NCBI GenBank assembly: GCA_965649765.1
Contig: OZ287749.1
Span: 95,976,001-96,040,000, forward strand
From: Bispira polyomma
Lineage: Eukaryota
Reading direction: 5' to 3'
DNA: 64,000 nt
Shown: positions 1,879 through 62,041 of the stretch, in pieces
Layout: every line of letters starts with the position of its first letter
Numbering within the stretch: the stretch's first letter is position 1
The notes under the pieces: generated by a model
What the model was told of the DNA's origin: nothing
Databases searched by the model: none
Seen by the model: only the letters and a program-made list of their open reading frames with translations
Made by a program: the position numbers and the translations under genes

Positions 1879-2751
1879 ATGGCTGCCAAGCTAAGACTCC
1901 AGAGACCAGGTACGCTGGTGAGACAGCCGAGTACCAGTCTTGTGTCCCTCAGCTTGGGTGGCAAAGGTGTCTCTCCCTGTCAGTTTGACAACTGTGCCTC
2001 AATCACTACTCTCTCCAATGGTAACCTAGCAGTGGCAGACACCAACAACAATCGAGTTCAGATCATCTCGCCTTATGGAGACCCAGTGGCCACAGTGGGA
2101 GCCAAAAAACTGAGGGGACCCTGGGGGGTCACCTCTCTACCTTTCGGGAAATTCTGCGTCAGTGAAGGCTCCAAACAGAGAATTATAGTGTATGCCGATG
2201 ACGGTACCTTTATCTCTAAATTCAAGGTGAAAAGGGTGGATGAACCCTGTGCCTTAGCGGTGTGCCCAGCGACAGGAAATGTGGTGGTGGCGGACTACCA
2301 CAGGCCAAATATTTACATCTATGACCTTGAAGGGTCGCTCGTCACTTCGTTTGAGACTGAAACAGATTTGCTCTCCGGCGATCAGCCTACTGCAGAACAC
2401 ATAGCTGTTGATAGAACTGGAAACATCTTCCTTAGCTTCGGATCTGGCCACTCGGAAATGCAAGTCTTCAATAAACACGGGAGGTTTCAGTTTAAATTTG
2501 GCAACTTCACATCAGCTTGCGGTGTCCACATTACTGCCAAGAGTAACATGTTGATTGCTGAGAGGGAGCAGCGGTCCGTGTCTCTGTACAGTACTAGTGG
2601 TCAGTTTATACAGCAGCTGGTCACAGAGAGTACGGGAATGAAGGCTTACCCACATGCTCTCACCGTGGTCAAGGGAGACACCATAGTGACCACTTCATCC
2701 GACGACATCTACGCTTGCCCTACTTGGTTACACTTCTACAAGTTAGGGTAG
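1879..2751 (+). CDS. NHL-repeat (six-bladed beta-propeller) protein, similar to the C-terminus of TRIM2/3/71; possibly the last exon of a longer gene
   Basis: 290-aa ORF with NHL repeats (GNLAVADTNNNRVQI, LRGPWGV, GNVVVADY, IAVDRTGNIF, FQFKFG, YPHALTV). A pyrimidine tract plus CAG acceptor (1871-1873) lies just upstream of the ATG, and AATAAA is at ~2813. Confidence 0.85.
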   Translation: MAAKLRLQRPGTLVRQPSTSLVSLSLGGKGVSPCQFDNCASITTLSNGNLAVADTNNNRVQIISPYGDPVATVGAKKLRGPWGVTSLPFGKFCVSEGSKQRIIVYADDGTFISKFKVKRVDEPCALAVCPATGNVVVADYHRPNIYIYDLEGSLVTSFETETDLLSGDQPTAEHIAVDRTGNIFLSFGSGHSEMQVFNKHGRFQFKFGNFTSACGVHITAKSNMLIAEREQRSVSLYSTSGQFIQQLVTESTGMKAYPHALTVVKGDTIVTTSSDDIYACPTWLHFYKLG

Positions 2752-22800: not shown

Positions 22801-25800
22801 ATTAAGCTGTGTCAACACTGAAGGATTTTCATAAAGTCATGAATGAAATTGTGACATTCTAAAACTAAATGGGTATGTCTATATATTTGGTAAAATCTGA
22901 AACAGCTCATCACGTTAAGGTTACCTTTTGTACAGCCACTTCACAATGTCATAAAGAAGATCAAAAGAACATTTAAATCTAAAGACATAAACTGTTAATG
23001 ATTTCTTCATTGCACATCAGCCCCAATCAATGTCCTGGCACCAATTTAATGACCTGTACATGTGAATGTCTCAGTAATAAATGTAACAGATTTAGATCTT
23101 CGAACAATGCACCTTCCAATTAAACTGATTTCATGTTGTTTGTTGTTTGATCTCTTACCTCTTTCTTAAGGTTACATGATTATATTTTAAAATTTTCTAA
23201 GATTAAATCATGAAGTGGCATTCAAATCTGAGATCTATCTACTGGCAATATACTTAAAACTACGGAGGGGCTGCAGTGGCCTAGTGGTTAGAAGTGCTTG
23301 CTAATAATCACTGATCTCTTAATCCCATTCATTCCTTCAAGAAGGAAAGTTTGTCAGGTACTTTCCGTAGGATGTTAGTTTACAGTGTTTAAGCACCTGT
23401 TTCTTCCACCATTAAATCTGGCCATCGTGATATGACCTAAGCTGTTCAAAGCAGTATCATCCCCAACTTAATTCAAATTCAACTAAACCCAAACTACTGT
23501 ACATATAATGGTGGACACATTTTTTTCCCAGTGAGATAACTGATGAATTGATGATATCAAGTTTTCTGAAAAGTTTTCCACCCACAACCTTGAGTCAGAG
23601 GAACTTCTGTTAGGACCTATTTCTAAACATCCTTTGTTGCTTTGTGATTTTAGTAATCACCCTCTTGGCTAAAAGACTAAACTTAGACGTCAGCTGTTTC
23701 TGAACATAAGTGCAGCTCAGCAAATGGCTGCATCAGTAAAACGGACTCTGCAGGGAGTGGAAATCTCAAGCAATCTTTTTAAATCATCTTGAATAATTAA
23801 AATTTTTAATAAAACTAGTGAAAATTTAGAATAGCAATTTAATAGTCGTAGTAAACAGGGATTATAAGTGAAAATTGTAAACTAGCCAACTTATATTCTC
23901 GGTGAAAACTTTCACACATGTTCAATGTAGTGTTTTTAATCCAGGGAGAGTCAAACTGAGCGTTTGATAATACAGTGTACAATTAGACTTATTATATCAA
24001 ACTGCAACCTTGTTTTGGGGTTAAAATAAATGAAGAGTGCTTTTTTGAATACGATTATTCATTTAATTGACACTGCATGATGATTCATAATAAGCTTTTG
24101 TTTAAATTTCACGATTTCACTGCCAAAACGTACACAATCATTCAAAAATATCAAGCCACTTATAATCACCAAATATGTATATACGACACAGTGTTTAGTA
24201 TAACTCCGAAATAATAAAAGGTACAACTTTAAAAAATTTAAATGAATGTTAATTGTTGTATCTCACAATCTACTTATGTCACCAGGCCGACACTTTCTGT
24301 AAATTTAAATGTCGGTTTTGAATTTCCTAACGAGACTTTAAAATCTACTTTGTTATGCTTTAACCGATTACACCTATACTGTTCATATGTTTAAGAGACC
24401 TTTATGCCCAATAGAGGGCCCGGTACTTCCTGTAACATGTAAATTTGTTTTTCATTATCATATTGTAAATTATACGTGTCACCTAGTCACTACAATGAAA
24501 TAAAATAAATCAAAAAATAACTAAAGGTGGAGCGAATATTTATAGGACGATTAATAAGCTAACTATGCACATGTTAATTAATATTATTATTGTTATTATT
24601 ATAGATTTTTAACGCGCTTTATTGATGCTAGGCATCTTCTAAAGCGCAACAGCAGAATCATTAGTCCAATCATTAAGTCCATGGAAATTGCAGAGTCGTA
24701 AGGAAGGAAGTGGGAGCGTGCGCGAGGAAAGCTAAGGTGGGTAGGCAAGATTAAAAAGATAGGTTTTAAGTTTTTTCCTAAAACCGATAAGTGTGTCAAC
24801 TGATCTGAGGTCAAATGGGAGACTGTTCCATAACCGTGGAGCTGCGGTGGAGAACGCTCTGAAACCCGCCTTTCTGATTGGTCTAACCGAAGTGACAGAG
24901 AGTCTGTTGCCTCTCTTGCGGTTACTAAAGGAAAGAAGGGAGGCAAGGTAGGGTGGCTGTTGAGTGATTACAGCCTTAAAAGTGGTAACGTGAATTTTAA
25001 ACAAAATTCGAAATTCAATGGGCAACCAGTGTAATTTTTTGAGGTAAGGAGTAACGTCTGTGCGACAACCCAGGCGAAAAATGACCCTACATAGGTAGTT
25101 TTGGATGGACTGGAGCTTTTTAATGTTTGACTTATTTGCTTCGTACAAGAGAGAATTGCAGTAGTCGAGGCGGCTACTTACAAGGGCATTTGCCACAATT
25201 ATCGCTGTGTCCATGGACAAGTGGTTTCTGATTCTTTTGATGTCGCGTATGTGGTAATAGCAGGAGCGACAGATGTTGGCAACATGAGTATCGAACGAAA
25301 AAGCTGAATCAAAAGTGACACCCAGGTTTTTAGCATTTTCGGAAGGTAGTATGTCTTTTCCCAGCAGGGAGATGGGAAACAAAGATTTTTGGAGTTCACT
25401 GTTTTTCTTGTTTCCTATGAGGATGAATTCTGTTTTGTCAGGATTAAGCTTTAGTTTGGAGTAGTTCATCCACGCCTGGACATCAGACAGACAGTCTGCA
25501 AGTAGGTCTATGTTAGTATCTGCGTTTTGTGCATTGAGGGAGAAATAGACTTGAGTGTCGTCTGCATACATGTGGTGTTTTATATTGTGTTTATTGATGA
25601 CAGTGCTGAGAGGATGTGTATAAAGGGTGAAAAGTAGAGGACCAAGGACGGATCCCTGGGGTACTCCATATGGAAGTTTTATGGAAGATGATAGGTGATC
25701 ATCTAGTTTAACTCTTTGTGCCCTAAGAGTAAGGTAGGATCTCATCCATTTAAGGACACTGCCATTTATACCGAACCACTGCTTGAGAGTGTCGCAGAGC

Positions 25801-28800
25801 AGGACATGATCAATAGTGTCGAATGTAGCTGAGAGATCCAGAAGGGTGAGGGCCACTGTGTCGTTGCGGTCCAGTGCAAGATTGATATCATTGCTGATGG
25901 AAAAAAGGGCACTTTCTGTAGAGTGAAATTTTCTATAAGCAGACTGGTGGCGATTTTCAATGTTTTGTCTATTAAGGTGGTCAGAAATTTGTTTAGCTAC
26001 AGCTTTCTCAATGACTTTTGAGACGAAGCTAAGGTTTGACACCGGTCTGTAGTTTTTGAGATGGTTTTTATCAAGCCCTTGTTTTTTAATCAAGGGAGTT
26101 ACATTTGCCGTCTTGAAACAGGTGGGAAAAACACCATCCCGAAGAGAAAAATTTAATATATTTGTTATGGGTGTGACAAGAATGTCAAGACATTGACTCA
26201 GAATAACTGCTGGGATGGGATCTAAGTCACAAGATTTAATAGTAGAGGATTTGATGAGTTTCAGAACTTCAAGCTCTGACAGTGTACTAAAATGAAACAG
26301 GTTACAAATCTTATATCCTGGGGCTGGAGGATTGAAGTGATGTATCGTTGGGAAGGCGTCACGAATGTTGCTGATTTTTTCTATAAAAAATTTTCCAAAT
26401 TTTTCTGATAAAAAAGTAAGACAGTGGTTTATGGGGAGAACCTTCTCTGATGTTCGATGTAGAATTTTGTTTATGGAGGCCCATAACCTTTTGGGATTAT
26501 CCTGATTTTCGGTGATGATGGAGTCGTAGTGTTGCTTTTTGGCATCAGTTATTAGCCTGTTGTAATTATTTGTGGCGATACGGTAACGGCTTCTGTCTAA
26601 GGAGGATTTTGTGCGTCGCCATTGACGCTCAAGTTGGCGTTTGCGTCTTTTGGCTTCTGTAATGGCGGCATTGGTCCATTCATGGTTGTTAGTTGGGGGA
26701 AGGGTTTTTGATACCCATGGCGCATGTTTATCAAGGACAGTAGAAAGGCAGTGATTGTATTGTAAGCTAAGGCTTTCAGCATTTTTGCATGGATGTTTGA
26801 TGAGATTTGTTTCCAGGATATCGTCTTCTGTATTTTATGACACAAGGTTTATGTGAGGCAGGTATTGGTAAATTTAAATAGGCGAAGGTTGCTAGGTGAT
26901 CTGAAATCCCATCAGTTACCCATGATTCTCTGATGAGATTTGAATTTGGTCTTGCGATTACCAGATCGAGTATGTGATTGTGGATGTGGGTTGAAGTAGA
27001 GATAAACTGTGAGAACCCAAAAGTGTCGAGGAGGGTGTTGAAATCTTTTGTCGCAGTATTTTCTATGTCGAGCTTGATGTTGAAATCACCAAGGATGATA
27101 GCTTCAAATGGGAGAAGGTTAAGGGTCTCAAGGAATTCGGAAAACTCTTGAGTAAAACTAGTTAAAGAAGGGATGGGTGGTCTGTAAAAGGAGGAAACTA
27201 GGAATGAATGATAACCGTTTGAAATTTTGCATGAAATGTGTTCGAAAGACGAGTAGGACTGGTTTTTTAGAATTTCACAGGAAAGGGTATTTTTCACAAA
27301 AATGCCAACTCCTCCCCCGCGTTTGTGCAACCTGGGGAACTGATGAAATTTGTAGCCCGGAGGAGTAATATCCGATAAAAAGGATGTTAATATGGTACAT
27401 GTATTGTACACAAGTTGAGATATCTTTCACTGGCTCTTGTAAACTACACTATAAAAGTGGCACTTTAGCATCATCTGTAATTCTTTGTCACCCATTTGGC
27501 CAAAAAGTACATGTGTGTTGTCTATTCACACGTCTTCCAATGAAGGAGAATATTTAAAGCCTCTGATTATTCATTACATGTAGCCAAGGACCAACAAACG
27601 ATGTTAATTCTATCACGGTGTTTGTTTTTGGTTTGAAAATTTTCCATATATATAGATGACAAGAATAATAGGTGGTATTTTTAAATGGGCCACAACAATT
27701 ATTATCACCCACACAAATATTCAGTTAAATAACTATCTCCCTTTGCCTATGATTTAAACTGCTAATTTATATATCTCTGAGATTAAGTCTTTAGATTTAA
27801 ACATACTGTACTATTCTTTAACTTGCAAACATTAAAAATGGATTGCACAATCAAGTACATTTGCAGGCATTTTAGTGCCTATGATATAGTTAGGAATCTA
27901 ATGCCCCTTTCACACTTGACGGTATGGTAGACAAGACCAAGCGTTGCCAAAAGGTCTTGGAACTTGTCTGTACATCATGTAACATATTGGCTGTTCCATC
28001 TGGGTGAAATATAGCCCCTTGATATTTGTCGAGAGAAGTTTTATAGATGAAAACAGACAATTCCTGGCATGGAAGACCTAGAGTAATGATACAGAAATAC
28101 TCTTGAAATGGGCGGAAACACGCGATTGCTCAGGTAGAAGACTTACAGTAGTGATACAGGAATACTCAAGAACACTTGGAAATGGAGGGACACATTTTTA
28201 CACCTTGCACGGGTAACTGTAGAAGGTTAGGAAAGAAAGCTAAACTTATGAGGAGTTATAACTTCTCTTATTGCCTCTCTCAAAACCGCCATAGTGTGAA
28301 CACACCACATAAACAGCTAGACTTGATAAATAGATTTAATCAGACCAAAAATCACATGAAATTGTTCTGATATGACTGATTCAAACCTACTTACTGGTCA
28401 TTACTTCTTTATCAATGTCACATGATTAAATAACAAACCAAGAATGAGTCACAAATGTAAACAAGACATAAAAATGTAGTGGTATGTGACTAAACTTCAG
28501 TTAATAACAGACAGCACACTGAATGTACTTCCTCTTATAAATACTACAAATACAGCAGAACCTCGATTATCCAAACATGCTGGAAGAGCATGATTTTGTC
28601 TGGAAAAAAGAAGGTTCATAAATTGAGGGGAGGCACTTTTAAAATTTAGTATTATAGAATAGGAAAATCAAAATTTACAAGAGTGAAAATGTGTATATAA
28701 TTTTTTTTTCCAAATAGAGTCCACTGTTAAATTGCTAAAATCAACATACTTAGACTTCTCTTAAAAACTGTACCTCACTGATAACCACACCTAAAACTGA

Positions 28801-39169: not shown

Positions 39170-40558
39170 ATTTTACAATATGCAAATGACTCAACATTAA
39201 CTCTTTTAGACAAATTATCTATTACTCCACTCTAAATCTTATTGAAGAATATTCACAATATGCTGGTACAAAATTGAACTTTCAAAAGTGTGAAGGTTTA
39301 TAGGGTTTAGGAACTTGAAAAAATAGTGCGAAATGTTTTAAAAACAGACAAAAAAGTTTTGAAAACATTAATTAAAAAAAAGATCCCATAGAATATTTTG
39401 AAGTTTTTATAGGTTTGGATGGGGACAAATGTAATTCCATCAATTGGGATAAACAAAATCATTGAATTTCAAAATGTTCTTTCAAGATGAAAAACTAGAA
39501 AAGTTACACTTTATGGAAAAGTAGTTGTTATCAATACTTTGGATATGCCATTAATAAACATCATATATCTTATTTAGTGTACCACTACAAATTTTAAAAC
39601 ATTTTAAGAAACGAATATTTGACTTTTGGTTGGGCCAAAATCATAAAATTGAAAAAACAACTGTAATTGCAAAACAATATAATGGAGGCTTAGGATTTGT
39701 TGATATATTCTCAAAAGACAAAAGCCATGAAAGCTGCGTGAATTCAAAACACTATCAAAGATGGAATAAATATGGCCAAATTTTAAAAAAATATCTTTTT
39801 TACACTTTGAGTTTTAAAAATTGAGGAAACGGAGGTTTCATTTTAGTGAAAGACTCTTTTTGATGATAATAAAAATTGGCTTGATGAAAATGATGTTCTA
39901 ATAAGGTTGAAAAAAAAAAATTGGATGGTTGAGTATTCAATACCAACTGCTGCAAATATATAAATACAAGAAATGTTTCTATTTTTCACTTATAATGAGA
40001 ATCTCAACTTATTGTTCCTTCCGTTACAGTAAAAAACTTTAGTTATTGATAACCAAAAAATCCTTGACACCTTAAACAGAAATAATCTGGCAGAGAATCA
40101 CTAATACAAATTATACTAGAAAGAAATGGCAGATGATATCAAAATCAAAAATTCACTGACTTCAAGTCTAAGATATTTTTGATAAATCTATTGAATAAAC
40201 AACATCTAGAAATATATATTGGTGAAAAATTAATTTTACTATAATGTTAAAACATGTTTTGTTTTTTTTTGTTTGGCCTTGAAAAATGGAAGTGGTGTAA
40301 TTTTTACTAGAGTGGGTTTTGTTAAAAATAAGCAAACCTACAGATAATCGTTTCATAAAAATGGAACATATTATATTTAACAGTATGTAGAATAATGTAT
40401 AGTGCTTTTGGTGAAAATTTTAAACTGATATGAAAGGAATAAAAGGTTTGAAAGTAACAAGTATGACAGCACAAAGAGATCAATATTTTTATTATGGTTC
40501 TTCATATTGTGCATGTTTGAAGTTGACATAAACAGAAGTACATCTTTAGGAAAGTGTT
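39170..40558 (+). mobile_element. Old, highly degenerate L1/Tx1 ORF2 remnant
   Basis: Remnant translations LQYANDSTL (YADD), YAGTKLNFQKCEG, KVTLYGKVVVINTL and YNGGLGFVD, with many stops. Confidence 0.7.
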
Positions 40559-40578
40559 TGGATTAATAAACCTGGAAA

Positions 40579-41866
40579 ATGGATCAAAATACTGTTGATA
40601 TGTTGATTGGAAAGATCTCTGAAGTTATGGATAAAAAACTTAAAGAGAAACTGGGACCAATAAAACAAGACTTGCAAACATTGAAAAACTCTATGGAATT
40701 TGCATTAGATGAAATTAAGAAGATTAGTATAATTGAGGAGCGCCTAGAAGACAAAGGCAAAGCTATTAGTCACTGTGAAGCTGAAATAGTACATTTGAAA
40801 CATCAAAACAGGCTACTCGAAGAAAAAAACTGTTAAGTTGGAAATGTATATGAGAAGACAGAATGTGAAACTTTGGGGTATCCCTGAGGAAAGAAATGAA
40901 AATGTGGAAGAAAAAGTATTGAAGTTATTCTCAGAACATGGTGTAAACTTGTCAGAACGGTATATCATCAGTGCACACAGATTGGGACCATTCAAAAATA
41001 AAGGGATAAGATCAGTTATTGTGCGATTCATCCATCCAAAGGACAAGGCATTGGTGTTTCCCAAAAAGGCAAATTTGAAAGAAAAAAATATTGTTCTTTC
41101 AGAAGACTATCCACCGTTGGTAGCTCAACATCGTAAGATTATTTTACCCATCTTTTGCAAAGCCTTGGACAAGTATCGTCATTTGGGTCCTAGACTAAAT
41201 GTTGATAAAGTTTTACTACACAACCAGTGGTATGGAGTGCACAAACTTAAAGAGATCCCAGAAGAAGACCTAAGACCTGAGAATGTATTCACAGTGGAAA
41301 AAAAGGGAGTCACAACCTTCTTTACCAAGTTTTCTTGGTTTAGTAATCACAACACAGACTTTCCATTTACTTTGGAAGGTATTAAGTTTGAAAGTGTGGA
41401 ACAATACTTCATGTATAGAAGAACTGTCCTTTTTAAGGATATGGAAGCTGCAGAAGCCATTCTCGCTGAACATGACCCAGTCCAGAACAAACAGCAGGGA
41501 AGGAACATTCATAACGTCAACTCTGACCAATGGAACAGTGTTGCTGAAGAAGAACTTTTTAAGGGGGAGTATGCAAAGTATACACAAAATGATCAGCGAA
41601 AACAACGTCTGTTGAAAACTGGATCCACCCTGTTAGCCGAAGCAAGCCCAATGGATTTGATCTATGGTGTTGGTTTTTCCTTGCGAAACCCGAAGGTATT
41701 TGATCCTACAAAGTGGGAGGGCAAAAATTTGATGGGGAAAGTTTTGGAACGGGTAAGACAAATGCTAAGTAATGTTTCTCTGTGCATGAACATGAGGCTG
41801 AACAACAACTTTATGAAAATTCAATGTTTTGTTTTTATGCATTATATTTGGTATAGTGAGATATAA
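40579..41866 (+). pseudogene. L1-type ORF1 (coiled coil-RRM-CTD) fused to a C-terminal NADAR/YbiA-like domain; one frameshift in an A7 run (40823-40829)
   Basis: Coiled coil at 40579-40830. Removing one A gives EEKTVKLEMYMRRQNVKLWGIPE, the L1 ORF1 RRM entry motif, followed by AHRLG, RSVIVRF and LSEDYP. Then FSN...FESVEQYFM...FKD...AEAIL...P...K..GR...W...KYTQN...LLKTG..LLAEASPMD..YGVG...WEGKNLMGKVLERVR, matching the NADAR signature (~41310-41770). Confidence 0.88.
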
Positions 41867-42325
41867 TGGTCATATAATGTACCAGTTTCATCTCATTTAA
41901 TGTTTTCTTTTGTTACAATAGCTTTTTGTGTATTTCATCATTGATGTACTAGACATATAATGTATCAGTTATATTTAAGTCAATGTTTTCTTTTGTGTTA
42001 CGAAATCCAATGTTTTCTTTTGGTACACAAACCATGGTTTTGCTTTGATGCATTATAATTGGTATAGTGAGATATATTAGTCATATAATATTATTATATA
42101 TCAGTTTCATCTCATTTATTGTTCTCTTTTGTTACAAAAACTTTCAAAACTTTTTGTGTATTACATCATAGATGTACTAGACATATAAGGTGTCAGTTAT
42201 ATTTAAGTTAATGTTTTCTTTTGTGTATTGCATCATATATGTGCAAAACATAAGCCAACAAAATATTATACCCAGTACTAGGCTACTTAATCAAATGTTC
42301 TGTTTTTGGTATACAAACCATGGTA
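41838..42325 (+). repeat. Imperfect ~200-bp tandem duplication in the inter-ORF spacer
   Basis: TGCATTATA..TGGTATAGTGAGATATA...GATGTACTAGACATATAA...ACAAACCATGGT occurs at ~41838-42040 and again at ~42049-42325. Confidence 0.8.
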
Positions 42326-43690
42326 TATCGGCTTATATATGTGAAACTAGAAGGTGGTTTTACAAGTTACTTGCCATACATAGGGTTACCTAATAGTGAT
42401 ATAAGAGTATATAATAGGATATTAAAAGACTTTTTTAAAAAAAAAAATAAATTGTTTTTTCCAATCTAGCTAAGTGTCAGATATTCTGGAACTACATAAA
42501 TATATTAAGTGTTAAAACATGGATATAATCTCAGAGGAGCACATAGTTCCTCATAAAAGCCCAGGTCATTTTGGTAGCAAAAATTAAGCATCAAGGAATT
42601 AGGCTGATTTGGCCTTTTTCCAAAATTCAGTTGATGATAGTAACCCTTATGAACAATTCAATACATTTATATGTCACTAGGACACATATGCTGACTGATT
42701 GATGTGTGGCATTGTGAATAGAGAGTTAAAAACTGAAGCCTATACCATTCATATTGATCAGTCTTTTAGGTGCAATACCTTTTTTGCACTTGTGAAAAAC
42801 CTTGCCCTACCGGTGGACAACTTGGTCTAATATGATTCAAATATGTCAGTTCGGGTCACCTTATATTTAATTCAATATTTTTATAAATAGGTTATGATGT
42901 TTTCAAATATCTGTAACAAGTCTCCTTAGTTAAAATTTTGAGTTTAAAAGATATAGAAATTTCACAGTTAGGGTCATAATGTTTTTTTCATAGAACTCTA
43001 TAAATAATATAGACAAGTACATGTATTATGACTTACCTCAGATCTCCTCTGTTTGATATGTAATTTAAAAGATGTGACAAAAATGCCAGTTATGGTTATA
43101 GAACACTTGTTTATAGAACACAATTATATCTTGGTAGTCTTTAAATTACATCTTGGTGCTATTGTCTGCTGGCTGTTGTTACTTATGACAGGTATTTAAT
43201 TGTAATCAGATAACATATTGTTGCCGTTAAAAACATACAATTGAGTTATCCTTGTGAAACAAGACCAGGTTATAAACTATGTGATAATTATGTCTAACAT
43301 GTTGAAGATGGTAGCTATTACAAACTAATAATAATAATAATAAAAAAAAACTTAATTAGTTACGCTCGCATGTTTTTGACAAACCCACAAGACTATGTTA
43401 TGTATCTCTGGTTTACATTTGACCAGCCAGTAACTTTGATTAATCACTATTTTTTGGCCTTGTATTTTTTAATTATTTTTGTACATTATGTATAGGATAT
43501 GATTTCTTAAAAAAAATGAAAAAGAACAGTTTTACTCACATAGTTATGCAAGTTTACCGCTTAGAGGTTGTATTTGTTGTTAAAATGTTCAATATAACAG
43601 TAACCTATTCATATGAATGTAGTTCAGTAATTGTATTTAGTCTCACTTTGAATTGTGTTAAGCGGTCAGCTCAGAGTCCTATTAGAGGTC

Positions 43691-46600
43691 ATTACTTTTG
43701 ATACAGTGAAGGTGTTATCAGTAAACTGTCAAGGCTTACAAGATAAAAAAAAAGAATAGATGTTTTAAAATACTTAAAAGACTTACATCCGAGTGTAATT
43801 TTCCTTGAGGACACACATTTAGTACAAAAAGATGAAAAGACAGTTCGATCTATCTAGAATGGTGAATGTATACTTAACGGTTATAATACAAATAGCAGAG
43901 GAGTTGCAATTTTGATTAATAATAACTTTGAATGTGAAATAAAGACAGTGTTTAAGGATACAAAAGGAAATTTACTTGTCATGGACTTAAAATTAAGCAA
44001 ATTTTCAATGCGTTCAATAAGCCTATGTGCTCCAAATATGGACACTCCTGAATTATTTAGGCCGGTGGGTGGATTTATTGAATCAAATGATGAGCAATAT
44101 AAAGTTGTATGTGGAGATTTTAACTTAGTGCTTGATCCACAAAAAGATTGTATGAACCACACGAGCATCAACAACCCAAGTTCTTGTAGGGCTGTATTGG
44201 AGATGATTCAAACTTTTGGGTTAACTGACTGTTATAAGTTAAATCATCCAAACAAGAGGCGATACACTTGGAGAAAAAAGAACCCATTAAAACAGGCTAG
44301 GCTTGATTATGTTTTGCTGTAAAATGTTTTAACTGACAAAATTCATAAATCTGATATTTTACCAGGATACAGAACTGATCATTCAATTTTAGAACTGAAC
44401 TTAATTTTAAACAAATTTGAAAAAGGAAGGGGTATCTAGAAATTTAATGTAAGCCTGTTGAAAAATGAGGATTATCTGAGCCTAATTAATAAAGTAATAA
44501 AGGAAGAGAAAGCTCGGTATGCAGTTCCAGTTTATCAATATGGTAATCTTGAACAAATACCAGATCAGGACTTACACTTTTCAATAAATGATAATACATT
44601 CCTTGAATGTTTGTTGCTCAGGATCCGAGGAGAAACTATTAAGTTCTCCACAATATTGAAACATGAAACCTTAAAAATAGATAACAAACTAAAACAGGAA
44701 ATAGAATTTCTTGAGAATGAATATACTCATAACACTGATAATCAGAAACTTTTAGGGGAAAAAAAGCATGAGTTAACAGAATTGAGAGAAACTCAACTAA
44801 ATGGTCATATTGTAAGGTCAAGAATGCAATGGTTATCTGAAGGTGAAAGGCAAACTAGATACTTCTGTTCCCTGGAAAACAAAAAATTTCTGGAAAAACT
44901 ATAAGACAAGTACAAGTACAAAATAATGTGACCTTACTTGACCAAAAGGGCATATTAGAAGAGGTCAAAAACTTTTACAGAAATTTGTTTAGCAATAGAG
45001 ATTCAAACCTAGCTGACATTGACCTTGAATCACTGCTTAAAGATGCAAAACTAAATAAATTAGATGATGATCAAAATTTAGCCCTGGAGGTGGAAATCAC
45101 CTTGATGGAACTATCTGAAGCTCTTTAGCTCTTTTAAAAATAAAGAACAATAAGACACCAGGCATCGATGGCTTACCTACTGAGTTTTTAAAAGTCTTCT
45201 GGTTGAAGTTGAAATATTTTATCTGGCAAAGTCTGAATTATAGTTTTAAGACAGGAGAATTGTCAATTTCCCTTAGACAATGTATAGTAACTTGTCTTCC
45301 AAAAGGCTTTTGACTCAATCTCTTGGAAATTTATGAATAATGTTCTTAAACTTTTCAATTTTGGTCAAGATATAATAAAATGGATCAATTTATTTAATCA
45401 TAATATCAGTGCAGCAATTATACAGTGCGGGTGGCTTTCAGAATTTTTTCAAATCCAGAGAGGCTGTCGCCAAGGAGATCCAATCTCACCTTATCTTTTT
45501 ATTATTTGCGCTGAGGTTCTGTGCAAATTAATACAAAATGACATAATATTAAGGGCATATTTATTGACAAATATGAATATAAGTTGACAAAGTTTGCTGA
45601 TGACACTACATTGTTTCTTGATGGATCTAGGGGCTCTCTGTTGGCTGCTTTAAAAATAAATTAGAAGTATTTGGTTCCTTATCCGGCTTGAATATCAATA
45701 CTGAGAAAACAAAACTGATTTGGATCGGCAAAAAACGAAAATGTAAGGAAAAACTTTATATTGGCAAAACTTTGTGTTGGGATATGGATACTTTTCAATT
45801 CTTAGGACTGGAATTTTCAGTAGATTTGATGGATATTATATCTATTAATTTCACTAAATGTCTACAAGAAATAGAAGAAACCCTGATAAACTGGAAAAAA
45901 CGGAGTTTGACTCCACTGTGTAAGATATCAATTGTTAAAACGTTTGTTCTAAGCAAACTAAACCATCTATTTATGTCACTTCCAACACCAGATATTAAAT
46001 TAATAGAGAGAATAAATAAGTTAATTTTCAACTTTATATGGGACAATAAGCCTGACAAGGTAAGCAGAATTCAATGTACCCAATACTATTTGGTTGGTGG
46101 TTTAAATATGGTAAACTTACAAAATTATATCAAGGCAATAAAGGCCACCTGGGTGAACAGAGTAATTTTTGATTCAGGGGCAAACTGGGTAAAATTATTT
46201 GAAAGCTCTGTAATGCATACTGATAATATATGTCAGATGGGTTTGCAACGGCTTCAAAAAGTAGTTGCAGATGTAAAAAATCCATTTTGGACAAATGTCA
46301 TACATTCTTTGTTATCACTATGTTACCTACTGAACCCTGAAACCTTTGAGGAAGGATTATCCAGTCCTTTCTGGTACAACCATAGATTAACAAGTACTCC
46401 TCTATTCTTCCCACATTGGTTTGAAAAGAATGTAATTTACATAGGAGATATAGTGGACGTGGAGTCAAGAAAGGTACTAAATTTTGAAGACATAAAAGCT
46501 AAATTTGGCTTGATAAAAGTGAACTATCTGGAGTATTATAGAATTAAATCTTTGGTAAATAAGTATTTAAATACATTAAAAAAGAATGACAACGAAAGCC

Positions 46601-47536
46601 CTTTCTAAGGCCAGTCCATCAGTCTCATATAAGAATTTTCTCTAAAAATAATAAGGGCAATAGAGCTCTCTATAAAGTTTTTAATTCTTCAAAAAAAAGT
46701 GTTTGGTAATGACAAATGGAATACAGATTTAAATCTTAATATTGATATAGATAGTTGGAAGTTTGCATACAAAATTTGTTTTAAAACTGTGACAGATAAT
46801 GCTTTAATTTGGCTGCAATACTGTATCCTAACACGCCGTATAGGGGTTAGACGTTTTCTGAAACAGATCAACATTTTGGCAAGTGCAAATTGTAGACTAT
46901 GTAATTTAGAAGAAGAATCAACTATCCACTTGTTTGTGAGATGTTTTTTTTTTTTTTTAATTTGGATATTTAACGTCCACTCTAGTACCTGTTTAGGTTA
47001 TATTGGGACGGGTAGTTGGAAACGCTGGAGGAAACACTGAATACAGTTGATCAAGGTTCTGCACTGAAACCAGCGGCCCACAGTAAGGAACTACCACCTT
47101 TCCCACATAGGCATTGACGGAATTCAAACTCACGTCACCCAGAGGTGAGAGACCAGTGATTGTGAAGCACAATGCTTGCTAACCAGTAGGCCACCGCGGC
47201 CCCATGGTTGCGAGATGTAATGTGTCAAATGAAATATGGAACCATATAACAAGCTTGATTTTAAATGTTTTGAACATAAGAATCACTTTTACTGACTACT
47301 TTATTATAATGGGCTATCCGTATTTTGATCAAAACTTTATACCAGTTGATACAATATTATTAGTAACAAAATACTACCTGTTTCAATATGCTAAATTAAA
47401 TAAAAAAATGTATTTTAGTATTATACAAAGGGTAATTAAACGTATGTATAAAGAGCAGGAAATGCTTGCTAAGATAAAATCAAATTTTGCTCATTTCAGT
47501 AAAATATGGGATAGATGGAAAATATTAATGGAATAA
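43691..47536 (+). pseudogene. L1/Tx1 ORF2 (APE endonuclease, reverse transcriptase, CCHC zinc knuckle), disrupted
   Basis: VLSVNCQGL, FLEDTHL, SRGVAIL, CGDFN, YTW, ARLDY, RTDHS; KTPGIDGLPTEF, KAFDS, RGCRQGDPISPYLF, FADDTT, GGLNMVN; CRLC-x8-H-x4-C. Multiple stops and frameshifts, an internal deletion and a SINE insertion. Confidence 0.92.
46945..47203 (-). mobile_element. tRNA-derived SINE family A inserted in L1 ORF2
   Basis: A box TGGCCTACTGG, B box GTTTGAATTCC, poly(A) tail (T run 46944-46958). TSD TTGYGAGATGT at 46934-46944 and 47208-47218. Confidence 0.9.
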
Positions 47537-48429
47537 TAATAGTATTAAGGTGTTTTTTCTTGTTTTTTTTGATACATTGACAAGTTGTGATAAATGTGGT
47601 TACTTTTTGTTATAAATATACTGTGTAATATTAAACTATATGTTAATTGTAACAGGTCAGTGTAGCTTTTTAATCCCTTTTCCTGCACTTACCTGCAAAA
47701 TAATTGTTAAAATGGGGAACATTAAAAGAAATAAAAATAGAAAAAAAAAAGTGTTGTTTTTGGTCTGTTTATAAAACATAAACCAATTATGTCAGGATTT
47801 TAGTTATTACTATAATTTCATATTCTACCTACAATTGTTGGATTTCATGTAATTTTGAAGGCCAAAAATATAATGATTTACATTTAAATAGTGAAATAAA
47901 ATTAACACAAATCTTCTTTTTTTATAAGTATTTCAGAAAATTATGACTAAAAAGTGCTTCTCATATTTAAATGAAATTTCTCATAATATTTTTAGAATCC
48001 TGTAAATATTTAGATGTTATGAATATATGTAAATTTTCAACTATACAGTGTAAACCTCACATAAATAAATATATGTTGTATAAGTATAATAGAAATGCTG
48101 TAATTTGAATTTGTAATCTTATTATTGATACTGTATATGAACCTTATTGTAAAGATCTAAAAGGGGGTTGGCTACCCACCCCCTCAAAGATTATTAGTGT
48201 TGGGTAGATAGCGGCAAGGGTACAATCACCAAGCCAGCAGCAAGGATCGAACAAGTACCCTCCGATCTTTCACATCCAAAGGGCCAACACACTGATCGCT
48301 ATAGGCCACAGAGAATAGCTATACTCGAAATTGCTATACTCTATATGGATAGCTGGACTGTATGGAGGTATAATTTTCTTAGGTTTTGGTTGGCCGAAAT
48401 TTATTGTTTTATAGGCATGCATTTTGAAA

Positions 48430-59970: not shown

Positions 59971-62041
59971 CAGGGTTGGCACTATGATTTTTTAAAGTGG
60001 GGTTTTTTGGACCCCACCTCTTATAAAAAGTGGGGTCCCGGACTAGCTTTCATGCATCCGATAGATATTTATCATTATAGTGACAAACACAGTAATTTAA
60101 ATATAAGAAATACGTAATGTTTTATTTCTACACTGATCAAACAACAGAATATAATAACATAACATATTGCATTTGATATTGCGCGTTTTTACAATTCTGT
60201 TTCAAATGCGCATTTTCATGAAAGTCTACTTGTAATACTTGTCAAAGAGATATTTCTTAATTTTTTTCCTAAACAGTTTTAGATTGTTACAGTCCTTGAT
60301 GTTGCAGGGTAACCCATTCCACAATGATGGGCCGCTCACACTGAATGATCTTGATGCAAAAGTGTGTCGGCTTGTTTTAGGTACAAGAAGATTGTTTGAG
60401 AAAGTTGAGGATCTGAGTCCTTCTCTAAACACTGGTTTTTGAGTCAGCAGGTTTTGCAAATATTCTGGAGCATTTCCTTGCAGGCAATTGTATACAAGCA
60501 CCATAATTTTGAATTTAATCCTGGCAGCAATTGGTAGCCAGTGAAGTAGCTTTCTGGATTCAGTCGAGCTTTCATATTTTGTCCTGTTAAGTACTAATTT
60601 GGCAGCTATATTTTGAACTCTTTGCAATTTCTTGATTGAGTTTTGTGGTAAACCAAACAGTACACTATTGCAAAAATCGAGATGTGACATTACTAAGCCT
60701 AGAACTAGTGTGTGTGTTGCTTCCGTTGTAAGGGTGGATCTGATGTTTCTAATTCGGTGAATGTGTAGCATAGCTACTTTGCATTTATGGGTAATGTGTT
60801 GTTTGAAGTTGAGGTGCTTATCTAAATAGACTCCTAGATACTTAATGTCAGCACTTGAATTAACCTCTTCACCATTCACTTTTAAACTATGTAAGAAACA
60901 TTTTCTGAGTTGCTTTGGATGGCCAAACAGGATGAATTCAGTTTTAGAGCTGTTCATTTTAAGATGGTTGGAATCCATCCACAATTTTATATCCTCAGCA
61001 CAATTTTCTAATGATCTAAGAGTGGTGGCTTCAGCTGAGATGTTGTTGGCTGAGAATGACAATTTGATTGCATGGTCGTCTGCATATCTGTGCAGTGACA
61101 TATCAGCTGGAACTACGTATTTCAGGGTACTTGCATAGCTAGAGTAGAGAGTTGGACCCGCACAACTGCCCTGTGGTACTGAGAAATCTAGTGGCGTTTT
61201 ATTAGAATAGCTTTTACCTATGTTCACACAGCATGATCTTGGGTTTAGATAGTTATTGAACCATTTCAGAGCACTTCCAGATACACCATATTGTTTGGAA
61301 TCCATCCACAATTCCCGGACTAGCTTTCATGCATCCGATAGATATTTATCATTATAGTGACAAACACAGTAATTTAAATATAAGAAATACATACTGTTTT
61401 ATTTCTACACTGATCAAACAACAGAATATAATAACAAACCAATGTTAGCCATGAGATTTAAAAATTTAAGTCAAACACTACAAATTAGGTATTTCTACAT
61501 CTAAATATATAATTTAACACCAAACAAACAAATGTTACCCATGAAATTTTACCAAACATCTAACAAATCAGCTATAGCTTAAAAAAGAAAAATAATTCTC
61601 CCCAAAAATAAGCTGTGGCTTTGTGGTATAATTGGATAAAACAAGTCGATTGTGAAGCCTTATTGACCATTAAGTTTCATAAATATAATTTAAAATAAAG
61701 TTTAGATACTTAAACTGTGAATTAAAATAAGTTGGGCAATTTTCGTATCACCCAGGCCCTAACAGAATTTTAAATGAATTTCTAATGAGTTTTAGAAACT
61801 ACCCATTCAAAACGCCATGACCGGAAGAACCAAATCAAAACATCGAAATCTGCCATTTTTGCTAGATCGCTTGAAACTGTGATTGAACTTCAAAATATAT
61901 AAAAATTAAAAGGGGAAAATGGCGATTTCTTACTTCTAAATAAATTCTGCGTCCTAATGGACGCATTGTATGTTTTAATTTGCGTCCGCTTACGAAAATT
62001 CCGCGTTTTTAGATACTCGGATGGCGTAAGCGCGAACCCTA
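59971..62041. mobile_element. Non-autonomous hAT element interrupted by a LINE
   Basis: TIRs CAGGGTT / AACCCTA and 8-bp TSD CTGTAAAG (59963-59970, 62042-62049). Confidence 0.8.
60160..61312 (-). mobile_element. 5'-truncated L2-clade LINE; RT C-terminal half is open (361 aa)
   Basis: SVPQGSCAGP, YADD, LKMNSSKTE, KYLGV, SHLDFCNSVL, LQRVQN, LHWLP; short 3'UTR with a (TGTTA)n tail. Confidence 0.92.

What the first reader, a model, noticed from the sequence alone, without database searches (positions are those of the whole stretch)
40579..41866. L1/Tx1 retrotransposon ORF1 fused to a NADAR (YbiA-like) domain: candidate element-encoded ADP-ribosyl eraser
Seen: a canonical L1 ORF1 (coiled coil; RRQNVKLWGIPE..AHRLG..RSVIVRF RRM; SEDYP..R into the CTD) runs in frame into a ~150-aa domain (~41310-41770). 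That domain has the full NADAR pattern: FSN, EQYFM, F.D...A..IL, K..GR, W, K(Y)TQN, LLKTG, LAEASPMD..(Y)GVG, WEGKNLMGKVLERVR. The acidic E and D of EASPxD (41639-41656) are retained. Established: NADAR/YbiA proteins are N-glycosidases, and bacterial NADAR antitoxins reverse DarT1 guanine ADP-ribosylation of DNA. Animals have guanine-DNA ADP-ribosyltransferases (pierisins, clam CARP-1) and PARPs that can modify nucleic acids. ORF1p trimerises and coats the element RNA. Inference: the RNP would deliver many NADAR copies to its own RNA/cDNA, erasing host ADP-ribose marks much as viral macrodomains do. NADAR is not among the ORF1 accessory domains I recall (PHD, esterase, zinc knuckle, macro), but I cannot confirm that it is undescribed.
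Basis: partly seen in the sequence, partly recalled or inferred. Interest (0 to 1): 0.92.

Follow-up and report, generated by a model that had tools for sequence, protein, structure and literature searches.

The report
LINE retrotransposon ORF1 carrying NADAR enzyme
A jumping gene (L1/Tx1-type LINE) in this invertebrate genome makes an RNA-coating protein that ends in a well-conserved NADAR enzyme domain, known elsewhere to strip ADP-ribose off DNA and RNA bases; the fusion is real, old and very abundant, was mentioned once in passing for oyster elements, and its activity has never been tested.

Summary
Window 40262-47750 (+) is a full-length but broken L1/Tx1-type LINE. Its ORF1 is coiled coil, RRM, CTD and a complete NADAR/YbiA domain (Pfam E 3e-37). 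This copy has a 1-nt insertion near 40825, which puts the coiled coil in another frame. A 1-nt deletion after 41766 removes the native stop. Sister copies encode an intact 397-aa protein.

The fusion is not unique. The genome gives about 2,100 first-look NADAR candidates, and the 150 scored are all strong. At least nine diverged subfamilies keep ORF1-NADAR upstream of an endonuclease/RT ORF2. About 140 database cluster representatives have the same architecture.

Catalytic residues are almost invariant: both glutamates in 154 of 155 domains. Between subfamilies synonymous sites are saturated, while NADAR changes no more than the RRM/CTD.

A model matches Phytophthora NADAR, YbiA and the human L1 ORF1p trimer. 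A trimer prediction passes its controls.

Erasing ADP-ribose from nucleic acids is plausible but untested. No RNA data and no host writer were found.

Novelty is limited. A 2025 paper notes NADAR in oyster Tx1 ORF1 proteins. This scan flagged the same fusion twice on other pieces of this genome.

The parts
40262..47750 (+). One full-length, inactivated LINE copy (about 7.5 kb): 5' UTR, ORF1-NADAR, long spacer, ORF2, 3' UTR and a short A tail
   Evidence: blastn against five sister copies gives 93-96% identity from about 40260 to 47750. Independent copies begin to align just upstream of 40271. They stop aligning after the A10 run at 47741-47750.
40271..40578 (+). 5' UTR (about 310 nt); the exact first base is uncertain within about 10 nt
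   Evidence: Multiple alignment of the 5' ends of six copies.
40579..40836 (+). ORF1 N-terminal coiled coil (85 codons). In this copy it is cut off from the rest by a +1 frameshift in the A-run near 40822-40829
   Evidence: The model has one helix over residues 3-92. The trimer prediction shows heptad contacts over residues 1-91.
40856..41104 (+). ORF1 RRM domain (RRQNVKLWG, AHRLG and RSVIVRF motifs)
   Evidence: The profile of 18 family members hits human L1 ORF1p 2ykp at E 9.4e-10, 2ldy (LINE-1 ORF1p RRM-CTD) at 1.5e-5 and the RRM 2w7a at 0.005. Foldseek gives 2ykq at E 1.4e-6 with TM 0.63-0.68.
41105..41284 (+). ORF1 C-terminal domain (CTD) and linker into NADAR
   Evidence: The Foldseek alignment to the L1 ORF1p trimer chains covers about 200 residues, including the CTD.
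41285..41767 (+). NADAR/YbiA domain. Active-site equivalents: Glu 41399-41401 (Pn E43), Arg 41420-41422 (Pn K50), Lys 41489-41491 (K75), Trp 41531-41533 (W89), Glu 41639-41641 (E125, the YbiA-defining Glu) and Asp 41654-41656 (D130)
   Evidence: Pfam E 3.2e-37. PDB 8bau at E 7.6e-13 and YbiA 2b3w at 4.5e-4. With the family profile these improve to 7e-33 and 3e-20. Fold TM is 0.76 to both. Residue roles come from PMC11543638 and coordinates.
41768..41866 (+). Read-through tail that is not part of the native protein; a 1-nt deletion after 41766 removed the family's stop codon
   Evidence: Intact copies end ...RVRQMLK then stop. Contigs of the family carry one more A after 41766 (table 4).
41768..43699 (+). 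AT-rich non-coding spacer between ORF1 and ORF2 (about 1.9 kb), with an internal direct repeat of about 180 bp (41826-41998 and 42037-42226)
   Evidence: It is conserved at 93-94% among sister copies. It has no long ORF and no similarity to the equally long spacer of a 40%-identical relative. Other subfamilies have spacers of 0.8-2.6 kb.
43700..47518 (+). ORF2 remnants (APE endonuclease, reverse transcriptase, C-terminal zinc-binding region). They are broken by frameshifts, a deletion of about 230 bp at 45301-45307 and an insertion of about 260 bp at 46945-47204
   Evidence: tblastn with an intact relative's ORF2 and blastn against sister copies. Pfam finds Exo_endo_phos, RVT_1 and zf-RVT (the last at 21.4 bits, below its 27.5 cut-off) on the intact relative. 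That relative aligns end to end with human L1 ORF2p at E 9e-96.
47519..47750 (+). 3' UTR ending in A10 (47741-47750)
   Evidence: Alignment of the 3' ends of four copies; the flanks diverge after the A run.

Best explanation
SHOWN. The window holds a dead copy of an L1/Tx1-type LINE. In intact sister copies its ORF1 protein is 397 aa: an N-terminal trimerising coiled coil, an RRM and CTD as in L1 ORF1p, and a C-terminal YbiA-subfamily NADAR domain that ends the protein. The fusion is the normal, ancient state of a very large LINE lineage in this genome and in other invertebrate assemblies. The NADAR active site is kept under strong purifying selection.

INFERRED. ORF1p binds the RNA that encoded it and coats it as trimers. 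Each RNP would therefore carry many NADAR active sites next to the element's RNA, its nascent cDNA and the nicked target DNA. Characterised YbiA-type and eukaryotic NADARs hydrolyse the N-glycosidic bond between ADP-ribose and guanine N2, and cytidine, in DNA and RNA. The most likely job is therefore to remove ADP-ribose from bases of the element's own nucleic acids. That would keep them usable as templates for translation and reverse transcription, against host ADP-ribosyltransferases or ADP-ribose damage. This is analogous to phage orphan NADARs and viral macrodomains.

My odds: about 0.9 that this is an active enzyme needed by the element, and about 0.45 that the substrate is ADP-ribosylated nucleic acid.
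For: - Domain identity: Pfam NADAR E 3e-37. The family profile hits 8bau at 7e-33, YbiA at 3e-20 and human L1 ORF1p at 9e-10.
- Structure: AF2 model pLDDT 89.8. Foldseek gives 8bau E 4e-11 with TM 0.76, 2b3w TM 0.76, and the L1 ORF1p trimer E 1e-6 with TM 0.63-0.68.
- Element context: 5' UTR, ORF1, spacer, APE-RT ORF2 and A tail in five sister copies. Nine other subfamilies show ORF1-NADAR, spacer and ORF2, some with ORF2 5'-truncated. An unrelated ENA contig carries an intact 1273-aa ORF2.
- Abundance: 2147 first-look NADAR candidates, of which the 150 scored all exceed 136 bits, about half of them in open frames of 400-460 aa.
- Breadth: 464 cluster representatives at E<=1e-30. Of the 150 listed, about 140 have RRM followed by NADAR in one protein of roughly 400-480 aa.
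- Active site across 155 fused domains: Pn-E43 equivalent E in 154, K50 equivalent K in 146 plus R in 2, W89 in 153, E125 in 154, D130 in 136. Roles of these residues are in PMC11543638.
- Selection: between subfamilies pS is 0.72-0.87 (saturated). NADAR pN is 0.18-0.28 in most pairs (0.36 in the most divergent). It is lower than RRM/CTD pN in four of the seven between-subfamily pairs and about equal or slightly higher in the rest.
- Trimer: ipSAE 0.75 against a best control of 0.01, runs agree in at least 95% of contacts, partner pLDDT 86. The mark was reached by 21 of 30 proteins solved as pairs of one chain and 0 of 23 solved as single chains. The pass may be from memory of the solved L1 trimer.
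- Biochemistry of relatives: a eukaryotic YbiA-type NADAR removes guanine-ADPr (PMC11543638). YbiA-type and sponge NADARs remove cytidine-ADPr from nucleic acids (PMC12945103). Phage orphan NADARs neutralise DarT1 (PMC11825919). Clams have the guanine-N2 DNA ADP-ribosyltransferase CARP-1.
Against: - No activity, substrate or expression data. Only DNA-like contigs were found and no RNA run.
- No host writer was identified. The Scabin/pierisin-like Pfam search of this genome found nothing, and its controls also rang nowhere.
- In the window's own subfamily the phosphate-binding Lys (Pn K50) is Arg. In E. coli C7 NADAR, K95R kept in vitro hydrolysis but lost toxin rescue.
- E. coli YbiA also has a small-molecule role, and NADAR specificity cannot be predicted from sequence.
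- The window copy itself is dead.
Confidence: 0.45

Rival explanations
1. The NADAR domain acts on the ends or caps of the element's RNA rather than on ADP-ribosylated bases. Candidate substrates are NAD-derived 5' caps, ADP-ribosylated phosphate termini, or by-products of RNA 2'-phosphate metabolism. It would thereby help translation, stability or priming of the bicistronic RNA.
For: - The NADAR family was originally predicted to work in NAD/ADP-ribose-linked RNA processing, as cited in PMC12477816.
- ESM Atlas structural neighbours include mRNA cap guanine-N7 methyltransferase/NADAR fusions of giant viruses and Macro/NADAR fusions.
- Invertebrate nidoviruses carry NADAR next to an O-methyltransferase.
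- The element has an unusually long inter-ORF spacer, so ORF2 translation may need special RNA handling.
Against: No NADAR has been shown to act on caps or termini in the papers read. All demonstrated nucleic-acid activity is on base-linked ADP-ribose.
Confidence: 0.17
2. The domain is a small-molecule N-glycosidase like E. coli YbiA, acting on riboflavin-pathway intermediates or free NAD/ADP-ribose derivatives. It would benefit the element only indirectly or not at all.
For: It belongs to the YbiA subfamily, with Glu at the E125 position. YbiA-like NADARs of bacteria, plants and fungi are linked to flavin biosynthesis.
Against: - A metabolic enzyme gives no obvious advantage to a LINE.
- It is nevertheless the best-conserved part of ORF1p over subfamilies whose synonymous sites are saturated.
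- It is always fused to a nucleic-acid-binding trimer.
- YbiA-type enzymes themselves hydrolyse ADP-ribosylated bases.
Confidence: 0.1
3. The domain works mainly as a reader. It would bind ADP-ribose or poly(ADP-ribose) at DNA breaks and so steer the RNP to PARP-marked lesions as integration sites, with catalysis secondary.
For: The ADP-ribose-contacting residues are conserved. In my own knowledge, LINE integration uses nicked DNA, where PARPs are active.
Against: Both catalytic glutamates are invariant in 154 of 155 domains, which a mere binder would not need. By contrast, the non-LINE multi-NADAR arrays have lost them in many repeats. No NADAR is known as a reader.
Confidence: 0.08
4. The fusion is an accident of this locus: a captured host exon, a chimeric insertion or an assembly artefact.
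For: A GTAAG follows the domain at 41753-41757. This copy is frameshifted.
Against: - More than 100 scored full-length matches at 35-93% identity.
- Intact 397-aa ORFs in sister copies that stop four codons after that GTAAG.
- The same order of parts in nine subfamilies and in other assemblies.
Confidence: 0.01

Closest known systems
Tx1 LINE families of Crassostrea gigas in Repbase whose ORF1 proteins carry a YbiA-family NADAR domain (noted in PMC12477816, 2025)
   Same: The same kind of element and the same fusion: LINE ORF1 plus a YbiA-type NADAR, in a lophotrochozoan. That paper also speculates on processing of the RNA intermediate.
   Different: - The genome here differs (1.04 Gb in about 14 large contigs).
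- I could not compare sequences with the Repbase entries, so orthology and the Tx1 label are unverified here.
- That paper gives one sentence and no analysis of anatomy, copy number, selection, active site or structure.
Human and mouse LINE-1 ORF1p (PDB 2ykp/2yko/2ykq, 2ldy, 2w7a)
   Same: Coiled coil, RRM and CTD in the same order. It sits upstream of an APE-RT ORF2 that aligns end to end with human ORF2p. A trimer is predicted.
   Different: - Mammalian ORF1p has no enzymatic domain.
- Pfam's L1 ORF1 models do not detect this protein.
- The inter-ORF spacer here is 0.8-2.6 kb, against tens of bases in human L1 (the human figure is my own knowledge).
Phytophthora nicotianae NADAR (8BAU) and E. 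coli YbiA (2B3W), the YbiA subfamily of NADAR
   Same: The fold matches at TM 0.76. The E43, K75, G78, W89, E125 and D130 equivalents are present, including the subfamily-defining Glu.
   Different: Those are free-standing proteins, whereas this one is the C-terminal domain of an RNA-binding trimer. Sequence identity is only about 25%. The K50 position is Arg in the window's subfamily.
Orphan NADAR antitoxin-like enzymes of T4-like phages that neutralise DarTG1 (PMC11825919), and viral macrodomains
   Same: A genetic parasite carries an ADP-ribose eraser of its own. This is the functional analogy behind the proposed mechanism.
   Different: - Phage NADARs belong to other subfamilies (His or Asp at the E125 position) and have a known writer, DarT1. 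No writer is known here.
- Macrodomains have a different fold.
Ectocarpus Gypsy LTR retrotransposons with an N-terminal NADAR in Pol (PMC12477816)
   Same: A retrotransposon-borne YbiA-type NADAR.
   Different: It is an LTR element in a brown alga. The domain sits in Pol rather than in the RNA chaperone, its nearest relatives are bacterial, and the acquisition was independent.
LINE ORF1 proteins with other accessory domains, such as the esterase in CR1/L2-type ORF1, PHD and zinc knuckles (my own knowledge, not tested here)
   Same: The principle that LINE ORF1 is modular and can carry an enzyme.
   Different: The fold and chemistry differ. NADAR points to NAD/ADP-ribose biology rather than lipid or chromatin binding.

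Membership tests
NADAR superfamily (Pfam PF08719) | Significant match to the family profile over its whole length | tested here: met
   E 3.2e-37 and 128.7 bits against a cut-off of 35.1, covering profile positions 9-162 of 163. The intact sister copy scores 137.4 bits.
NADAR superfamily (Pfam PF08719) | NADAR/YbiA fold | tested here: met
   The AF2 model has pLDDT 89.8. Foldseek gives 8bau at E 4.4e-11 with TM 0.76, and 2b3w at TM 0.76.
YbiA subfamily of NADAR | Catalytic Glu in the last beta strand (Pn E125), rather than the Asp of the DarT1-linked BC4488 type or the His of the phage type | tested here: met
   The E of AEASP aligns to E125. It is E in 154 of 155 fused domains. The definition comes from PMC11543638 and PMC11125620.
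YbiA subfamily of NADAR | Distal-ribose Glu (Pn E43) and phosphate-binding Lys (Pn K50) | tested here: met
   E is present in 154 of 155 domains. K is present in 146 of 155. The window's subfamily has Arg, a change that kept in vitro activity in E. coli C7 NADAR.
YbiA subfamily of NADAR | Hydrolysis of N-glycosidic ADP-ribose-base (or related) bonds | not testable with these tools
   This needs a biochemical assay.
DarTG1-type antitoxin NADAR | Asp at the E125-equivalent position and genetic linkage to a DarT1 toxin | tested here: not met
   Glu is present rather than Asp. The neighbours are LINE parts, not a toxin gene.
L1-type ORF1p (coiled coil, RRM, CTD) | N-terminal coiled coil able to form a trimer | tested here: met
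   There is a single helix over residues 3-92. Three copies score ipSAE 0.75 against a best control of 0.01, with heptad contacts. This is a prediction only and may reflect memory of the solved L1 trimer.
L1-type ORF1p (coiled coil, RRM, CTD) | RRM and CTD homologous to L1 ORF1p | tested here: met
   The profile hits 2ykp at E 9.4e-10, 2ldy at 1.5e-5 and 2w7a at 0.005. Foldseek gives 2ykq at E 1.4e-6 with TM up to 0.68.
L1-type ORF1p (coiled coil, RRM, CTD) | Match to Pfam's L1 ORF1 models (Transposase_22 and companions) | tested here: not met
   No hit at E <= 0.1 or 0.01 on window or intact proteins. I read this as a sensitivity limit of single-sequence search, because the family profile and the fold do match.
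L1/Tx1 group of LINEs | ORF2 with an APE endonuclease, reverse transcriptase and C-terminal zinc-binding region, collinear with L1 ORF2p; A-rich 3' end | tested here: met
   Pfam finds Exo_endo_phos, RVT_1 and zf-RVT (the last below its cut-off, 21.4 against 27.5 bits). The alignment to human ORF2p covers residues 8-1201 against 7-1181 at E 9e-96.
Tx1 clade specifically | Placement inside Tx1 in an RT phylogeny with reference elements; target-site specificity in many members | not tested
   No reference LINE set was on hand. The Tx1 label rests only on the Repbase naming reported for oyster relatives. Target-site duplications were not resolved.

The most novel reading that the evidence does not exclude
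Lophotrochozoan LINEs carry NADAR as a counter-defence. On this reading, hosts such as molluscs and annelids restrict retroelements, and perhaps viruses, by ADP-ribosylating bases of their RNA or cDNA with CARP-1/pierisin-like or other transferases. The ORF1p-borne eraser would be the element's answer. This would be the first animal example of an ADP-ribosylation arms race over nucleic acids between a genome and its transposons. The multi-NADAR host proteins and the NADARs of invertebrate nidoviruses would then be other players on the same battlefield.
Probability: 0.25. Interest if true: 0.85.

Novelty: new member of a known kind. Interest (0 to 1): 0.58.

Why it matters
The physiological role of NADARs in animals is an openly stated unknown (PMC11125620). 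Nucleic-acid ADP-ribosylation in animals has writers (pierisins, clam CARP-1) but no confirmed erasers (PMC11543638).

Here NADAR is the best-conserved part of the RNA-coating protein of a hugely successful retrotransposon lineage. That says NADAR chemistry matters for retrotransposition in these animals, and it gives a direct, testable handle. Natural intact domains exist in many diverged versions, and the catalytic residues to mutate are known.

If the substrate is ADP-ribosylated nucleic acid, this would reveal a host defence against retroelements not yet described in animals. If it is something else (cap or small molecule), it would still define a new accessory activity of LINE ORF1 proteins.

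The fusion itself has been noted once in the literature, so the value lies in the family-level evidence and the mechanism, not in first sighting.

Tried and rejected
- Pfam models for L1 ORF1 gave no hit. Membership was settled by profile-versus-PDB search and by fold instead.
- The word-indexed protein search found only 4 full-length and 2 domain-only relatives. The exhaustive search was needed.
- Expression: no RNA run holds the sequence. The four runs are short repeat-collapsed contigs that behave like genomic DNA, with depth rising towards the 3' end. Nothing can be said about transcription, and no splicing of the spacer was seen.
- Host writer: the Scabin/pierisin-like PF22596 search of the genome found nothing, and the control genomes also rang nowhere, so the result is uninformative. 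I had no CARP-1 sequence to search with.
- The GTAAG at 41753-41757 as a splice donor of a captured host exon was rejected. Intact copies stop four codons later, and the unit is contiguous in all copies.
- A hidden gene in the spacer was rejected. There is no conserved ORF and no nucleotide or translated similarity between subfamilies, and no tandem repeats.
- Origin of the domain: a FastTree of 213 NADAR domains is unrooted. The multi-NADAR group needs 5 changes, and one origin is not excluded. The direction of transfer between host arrays and LINEs is therefore unresolved.
- Organism names: two cluster look-ups gave no names except Haliotis rufescens for a multi-NADAR protein. The ESM Atlas records Annelida for a few members.
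- Target-site duplications could not be defined with confidence.
I compared natural copies only, and dN/dS is pairwise between natural intact ORFs.
Full report
**1. What is at the coordinates**

The region 40579-41866 does not hold one ORF but two.
- An 85-codon ORF (40579-40836) encodes a helical, heptad-rich peptide.
- A 342-codon ORF (40838-41866) lies in the next frame.

It also carries a complete NADAR domain: Pfam PF08719, E 3.2e-37, 128.7 bits against a cut-off of 35.1, profile positions 9-162 of 163, nt 41309-41767. A plain sequence search of the PDB finds Phytophthora nicotianae NADAR (8bau, E 7.6e-13) and E. coli YbiA (2b3w, E 4.5e-4).

**2. The copy is broken; the family is not**

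Sister copies elsewhere in the genome encode a single 395-397-aa protein. Compared with them, the window copy has two lesions in ORF1.
- One extra base in an A-run near 40822-40829 separates the coiled coil from the rest.
- One base is missing after 41766, which removes the native stop and adds a 33-codon read-through tail.

ORF2 is also damaged. It has frameshifts, a deletion of about 230 bp at 45301-45307 and an insertion of about 260 bp at 46945-47204.

**3. Anatomy of the element**

Alignment with five sister copies (93-96% identity) delimits the element at about 40262-47750. Its parts, in order, are:
- a 5' UTR of about 310 nt;
- ORF1-NADAR;
- an AT-rich, non-coding spacer of about 1.9 kb that is part of the element;
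- ORF2 with APE endonuclease, RT and a zinc-binding C-terminal region;
- a 3' UTR ending in a short A run, after which the flanks diverge.

An intact relative on an unrelated ENA contig has a 401-aa ORF1-NADAR, a 1.9-kb spacer and a 1273-aa ORF2. That ORF2 aligns end to end with human L1 ORF2p (E 9e-96, residues 8-1201 against 7-1181). This places the element in the L1/Tx1 group. I could not test Tx1 against L1 for want of reference LINEs.

**4. The N-terminal half is an L1-type ORF1p**

Pfam's L1 ORF1 models do not see it. A profile built from 18 diverged family members (alignment A1) does match.
- Human L1 ORF1p: 2ykp at E 9.4e-10 and 2yko at 1.5e-9.
- The LINE-1 ORF1p RRM-CTD entry 2ldy at 1.5e-5.
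- The human RRM 2w7a at 0.005.

An AlphaFold2 model made with that alignment is confident (mean pLDDT 89.8, pTM 0.72). Foldseek finds 8bau (E 4.4e-11, TM 0.76), YbiA (TM 0.76) and all chains of the human L1 ORF1p trimer (E about 1e-6, TM 0.63-0.68 over about 200 residues).

Three copies of residues 1-235 are predicted to form a parallel three-stranded coiled coil.
- The ipSAE is 0.75 against a best control of 0.01.
- The runs agree in at least 95% of contacts, and the partner pLDDT is 86.
- The mark was reached by 21 of 30 proteins solved as pairs of one chain and by 0 of 23 solved as single chains.
- The calibration held two copies, not three.
- Because the L1 trimer is solved, the pass may come from memory and shows likeness rather than binding.

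**5. The fusion is family-wide, old and abundant**

- *Matches in this genome.* A six-frame search with the window protein gives 120 matches out of 2100 first-look candidates. Most cover both halves (query 2-312) at identities from 93% down to 35%, and many lie in open frames of about 400 aa.
- *NADAR census.* The Pfam NADAR profile alone gives 2147 candidates. All 150 scored exceed 136 bits, and about half lie in open frames of 400-460 aa.
- *Subfamilies.* Nine further subfamilies were fetched with their downstream sequence. All nine show ORF1-NADAR, a spacer of 0.8-2.6 kb and then an ORF2 homologous to the reference, 5'-truncated in one or two loci.
- *Other assemblies.* An exhaustive search of 1.84 billion cluster representatives gives 464 proteins at E<=1e-30.
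- *Taxa.* The few taxon labels obtainable point to lophotrochozoans. ESM Atlas clusters of 415-489 aa with NADAR are labelled Annelida, and one related protein is from the abalone Haliotis rufescens. A second, coded species holds contigs 90-95% identical to ORF1 and ORF2.

**6. Is the enzyme kept?**

I mapped the domain onto the Phytophthora structure using residue roles from PMC11543638. The window copy retains these equivalents:
- E43, in EQYFM;
- K75, G78 and R79, in NKQQGR;
- W89;
- E125, in AEASP, the Glu that defines the YbiA subfamily;
- D130.

K50 is Arg in this subfamily and Lys in most others. The analogous K95R in E. coli C7 NADAR kept hydrolysis in vitro but not toxin rescue.

Over 155 ORF1-fused domains the counts are: E43 in 154, K50 as K in 146 plus R in 2, W89 in 153, E125 in 154 and D130 in 136.

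In pairwise comparisons of natural intact ORFs from different subfamilies, synonymous sites are saturated (pS 0.72-0.87).
- Non-synonymous differences in NADAR are mostly 0.18-0.28, and 0.36 in the most divergent pair.
- These are lower than the RRM/CTD values in four of the seven pairs, for example 0.228 against 0.294, 0.217 against 0.324 and 0.265 against 0.368.
- They are about equal or slightly higher in the other three.

NADAR also holds most of the invariant columns of the 18-sequence alignment.

**7. How it most likely works**

*Shown:* a LINE RNA-binding, trimer-forming ORF1p with a catalytically equipped YbiA-type NADAR at its C-terminus, maintained by selection.

*Established elsewhere:*
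- Eukaryotic and YbiA-type NADARs hydrolyse ADP-ribose from guanine N2 (PMC11543638) and from cytidine (PMC12945103) in nucleic acids.
- Phages carry orphan NADARs to defeat DarT1 (PMC11825919).
- Clams possess CARP-1, which ADP-ribosylates guanine N2 in DNA. NADAR as its eraser is explicitly 'not experimentally confirmed'.

*Inferred:* ORF1p coats its own RNA, so the RNP would bring many NADAR sites to the RNA, the cDNA and the target nick. There they would remove base-linked ADP-ribose that would otherwise block translation or reverse transcription.

*Rivals:*
- RNA-end or cap chemistry. This is supported weakly by giant-virus capping-enzyme/NADAR fusions and nidovirus OMT-NADAR linkage.
- Small-molecule N-glycosidase activity as in YbiA.
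- An ADP-ribose reader role.

None of these can be excluded without biochemistry. I found no RNA data and no host writer (uninformative).

**8. Comparison with what is known, and novelty**

Full-text searches for NADAR, YbiA or DUF1768 together with retrotransposon, ORF1 or non-LTR gave one relevant paper. PMC12477816 (Genome Biology 2025, on Ectocarpus transposons) reports NADAR at the N-terminus of Pol in one Gypsy lineage. [quoted passage not shown]

The fusion is therefore on record, in one sentence and without analysis. This scan's index also holds two first-reader notes of the same fusion on other pieces of this genome. I rate the finding a new member of a known kind.

- the anatomy of the element;
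- the scale of the family;
- the active-site census and the selection signal;
- the structural confirmation of both halves;
- the predicted trimer.

**9. Verdict**

Interest is moderate to high, because it offers a concrete entry to the unknown function of animal NADARs and to a possible ADP-ribosylation-based control of retroelements. It is lowered by the prior mention and by the complete lack of functional data.

Noticed in passing
window 41768-43699; also L057, L058, L059, L060, L061, L062, L064, L065, L036: Every subfamily has a long AT-rich non-coding spacer (0.8-2.6 kb) between the ORF1-NADAR stop and the ORF2 start. Its length class is kept but its sequence is not. The window's spacer contains an internal direct repeat of about 180 bp (41826-41998 and 42037-42226). 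How ORF2 is translated across such a gap is unexplained.
   Followed up: partly
proteins P0007 (Haliotis rufescens XP_048255699.1, 4240 aa), P0012, P0011, P0064, P0128, P0020: The nearest non-LINE relatives of the domain are proteins made of 2-8 tandem NADAR domains without an RRM. Many of their repeats have lost the catalytic Glu/Lys equivalents: E43 is kept in 38 of 56, K50 in 31 of 56 and E125 in 39 of 56. They could be the donor of the LINE domain, derived from it, or host players in the same pathway. An unrooted tree could not decide.
   Followed up: partly
L060 (G000:C9:28440000-28449600), with junction copies at C9:38579360, C12:43253702 and C1:46204711: One ORF1-NADAR subfamily (about 31-34% identical to the window's) lies upstream of a much more divergent APE+RT ORF2. 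Only its RT core matches human L1 ORF2p (E 1.7e-20, similar to its score against R2). The junction recurs in at least three loci, so it is a real family. The ORF1-NADAR module may be shared by two LINE lineages.
   Followed up: partly
window 24735-27411 (-) and 60229-61311 (-): There are other LINE remnants in the window: an RT at 24735-26093, an APE at 26779-27411 and an RT fragment at 60229-61311. None has an ORF1-NADAR nearby, and the RT at 25.4-26.2 kb is only 24% identical to the reference ORF2.
   Followed up: partly
window 1879-2748 (+): A 290-aa open frame with an NHL repeat (Pfam E 7.6e-14), possibly an exon of a TRIM-NHL-like host gene.
   Followed up: no
window 40200-46100 as laid on runs X1-X4: Contig depth rises about tenfold from ORF1 to the 3' part of ORF2. 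This is as expected if most genomic copies are 5'-truncated, so ORF1-NADAR copies are a minority of all copies of the element. A second coded species (organism B) holds contigs 90-95% identical over ORF1 and ORF2 but none over the first ~1.2 kb of the spacer (41776-42957).
   Followed up: partly
ESM Atlas neighbours of model m3cf6bb9201b9: Structural neighbours of the NADAR half include bacterial Macro/NADAR fusions and giant-virus mRNA cap guanine-N7 methyltransferase/NADAR fusions. This hints that some NADARs work at RNA 5' ends.
   Followed up: no
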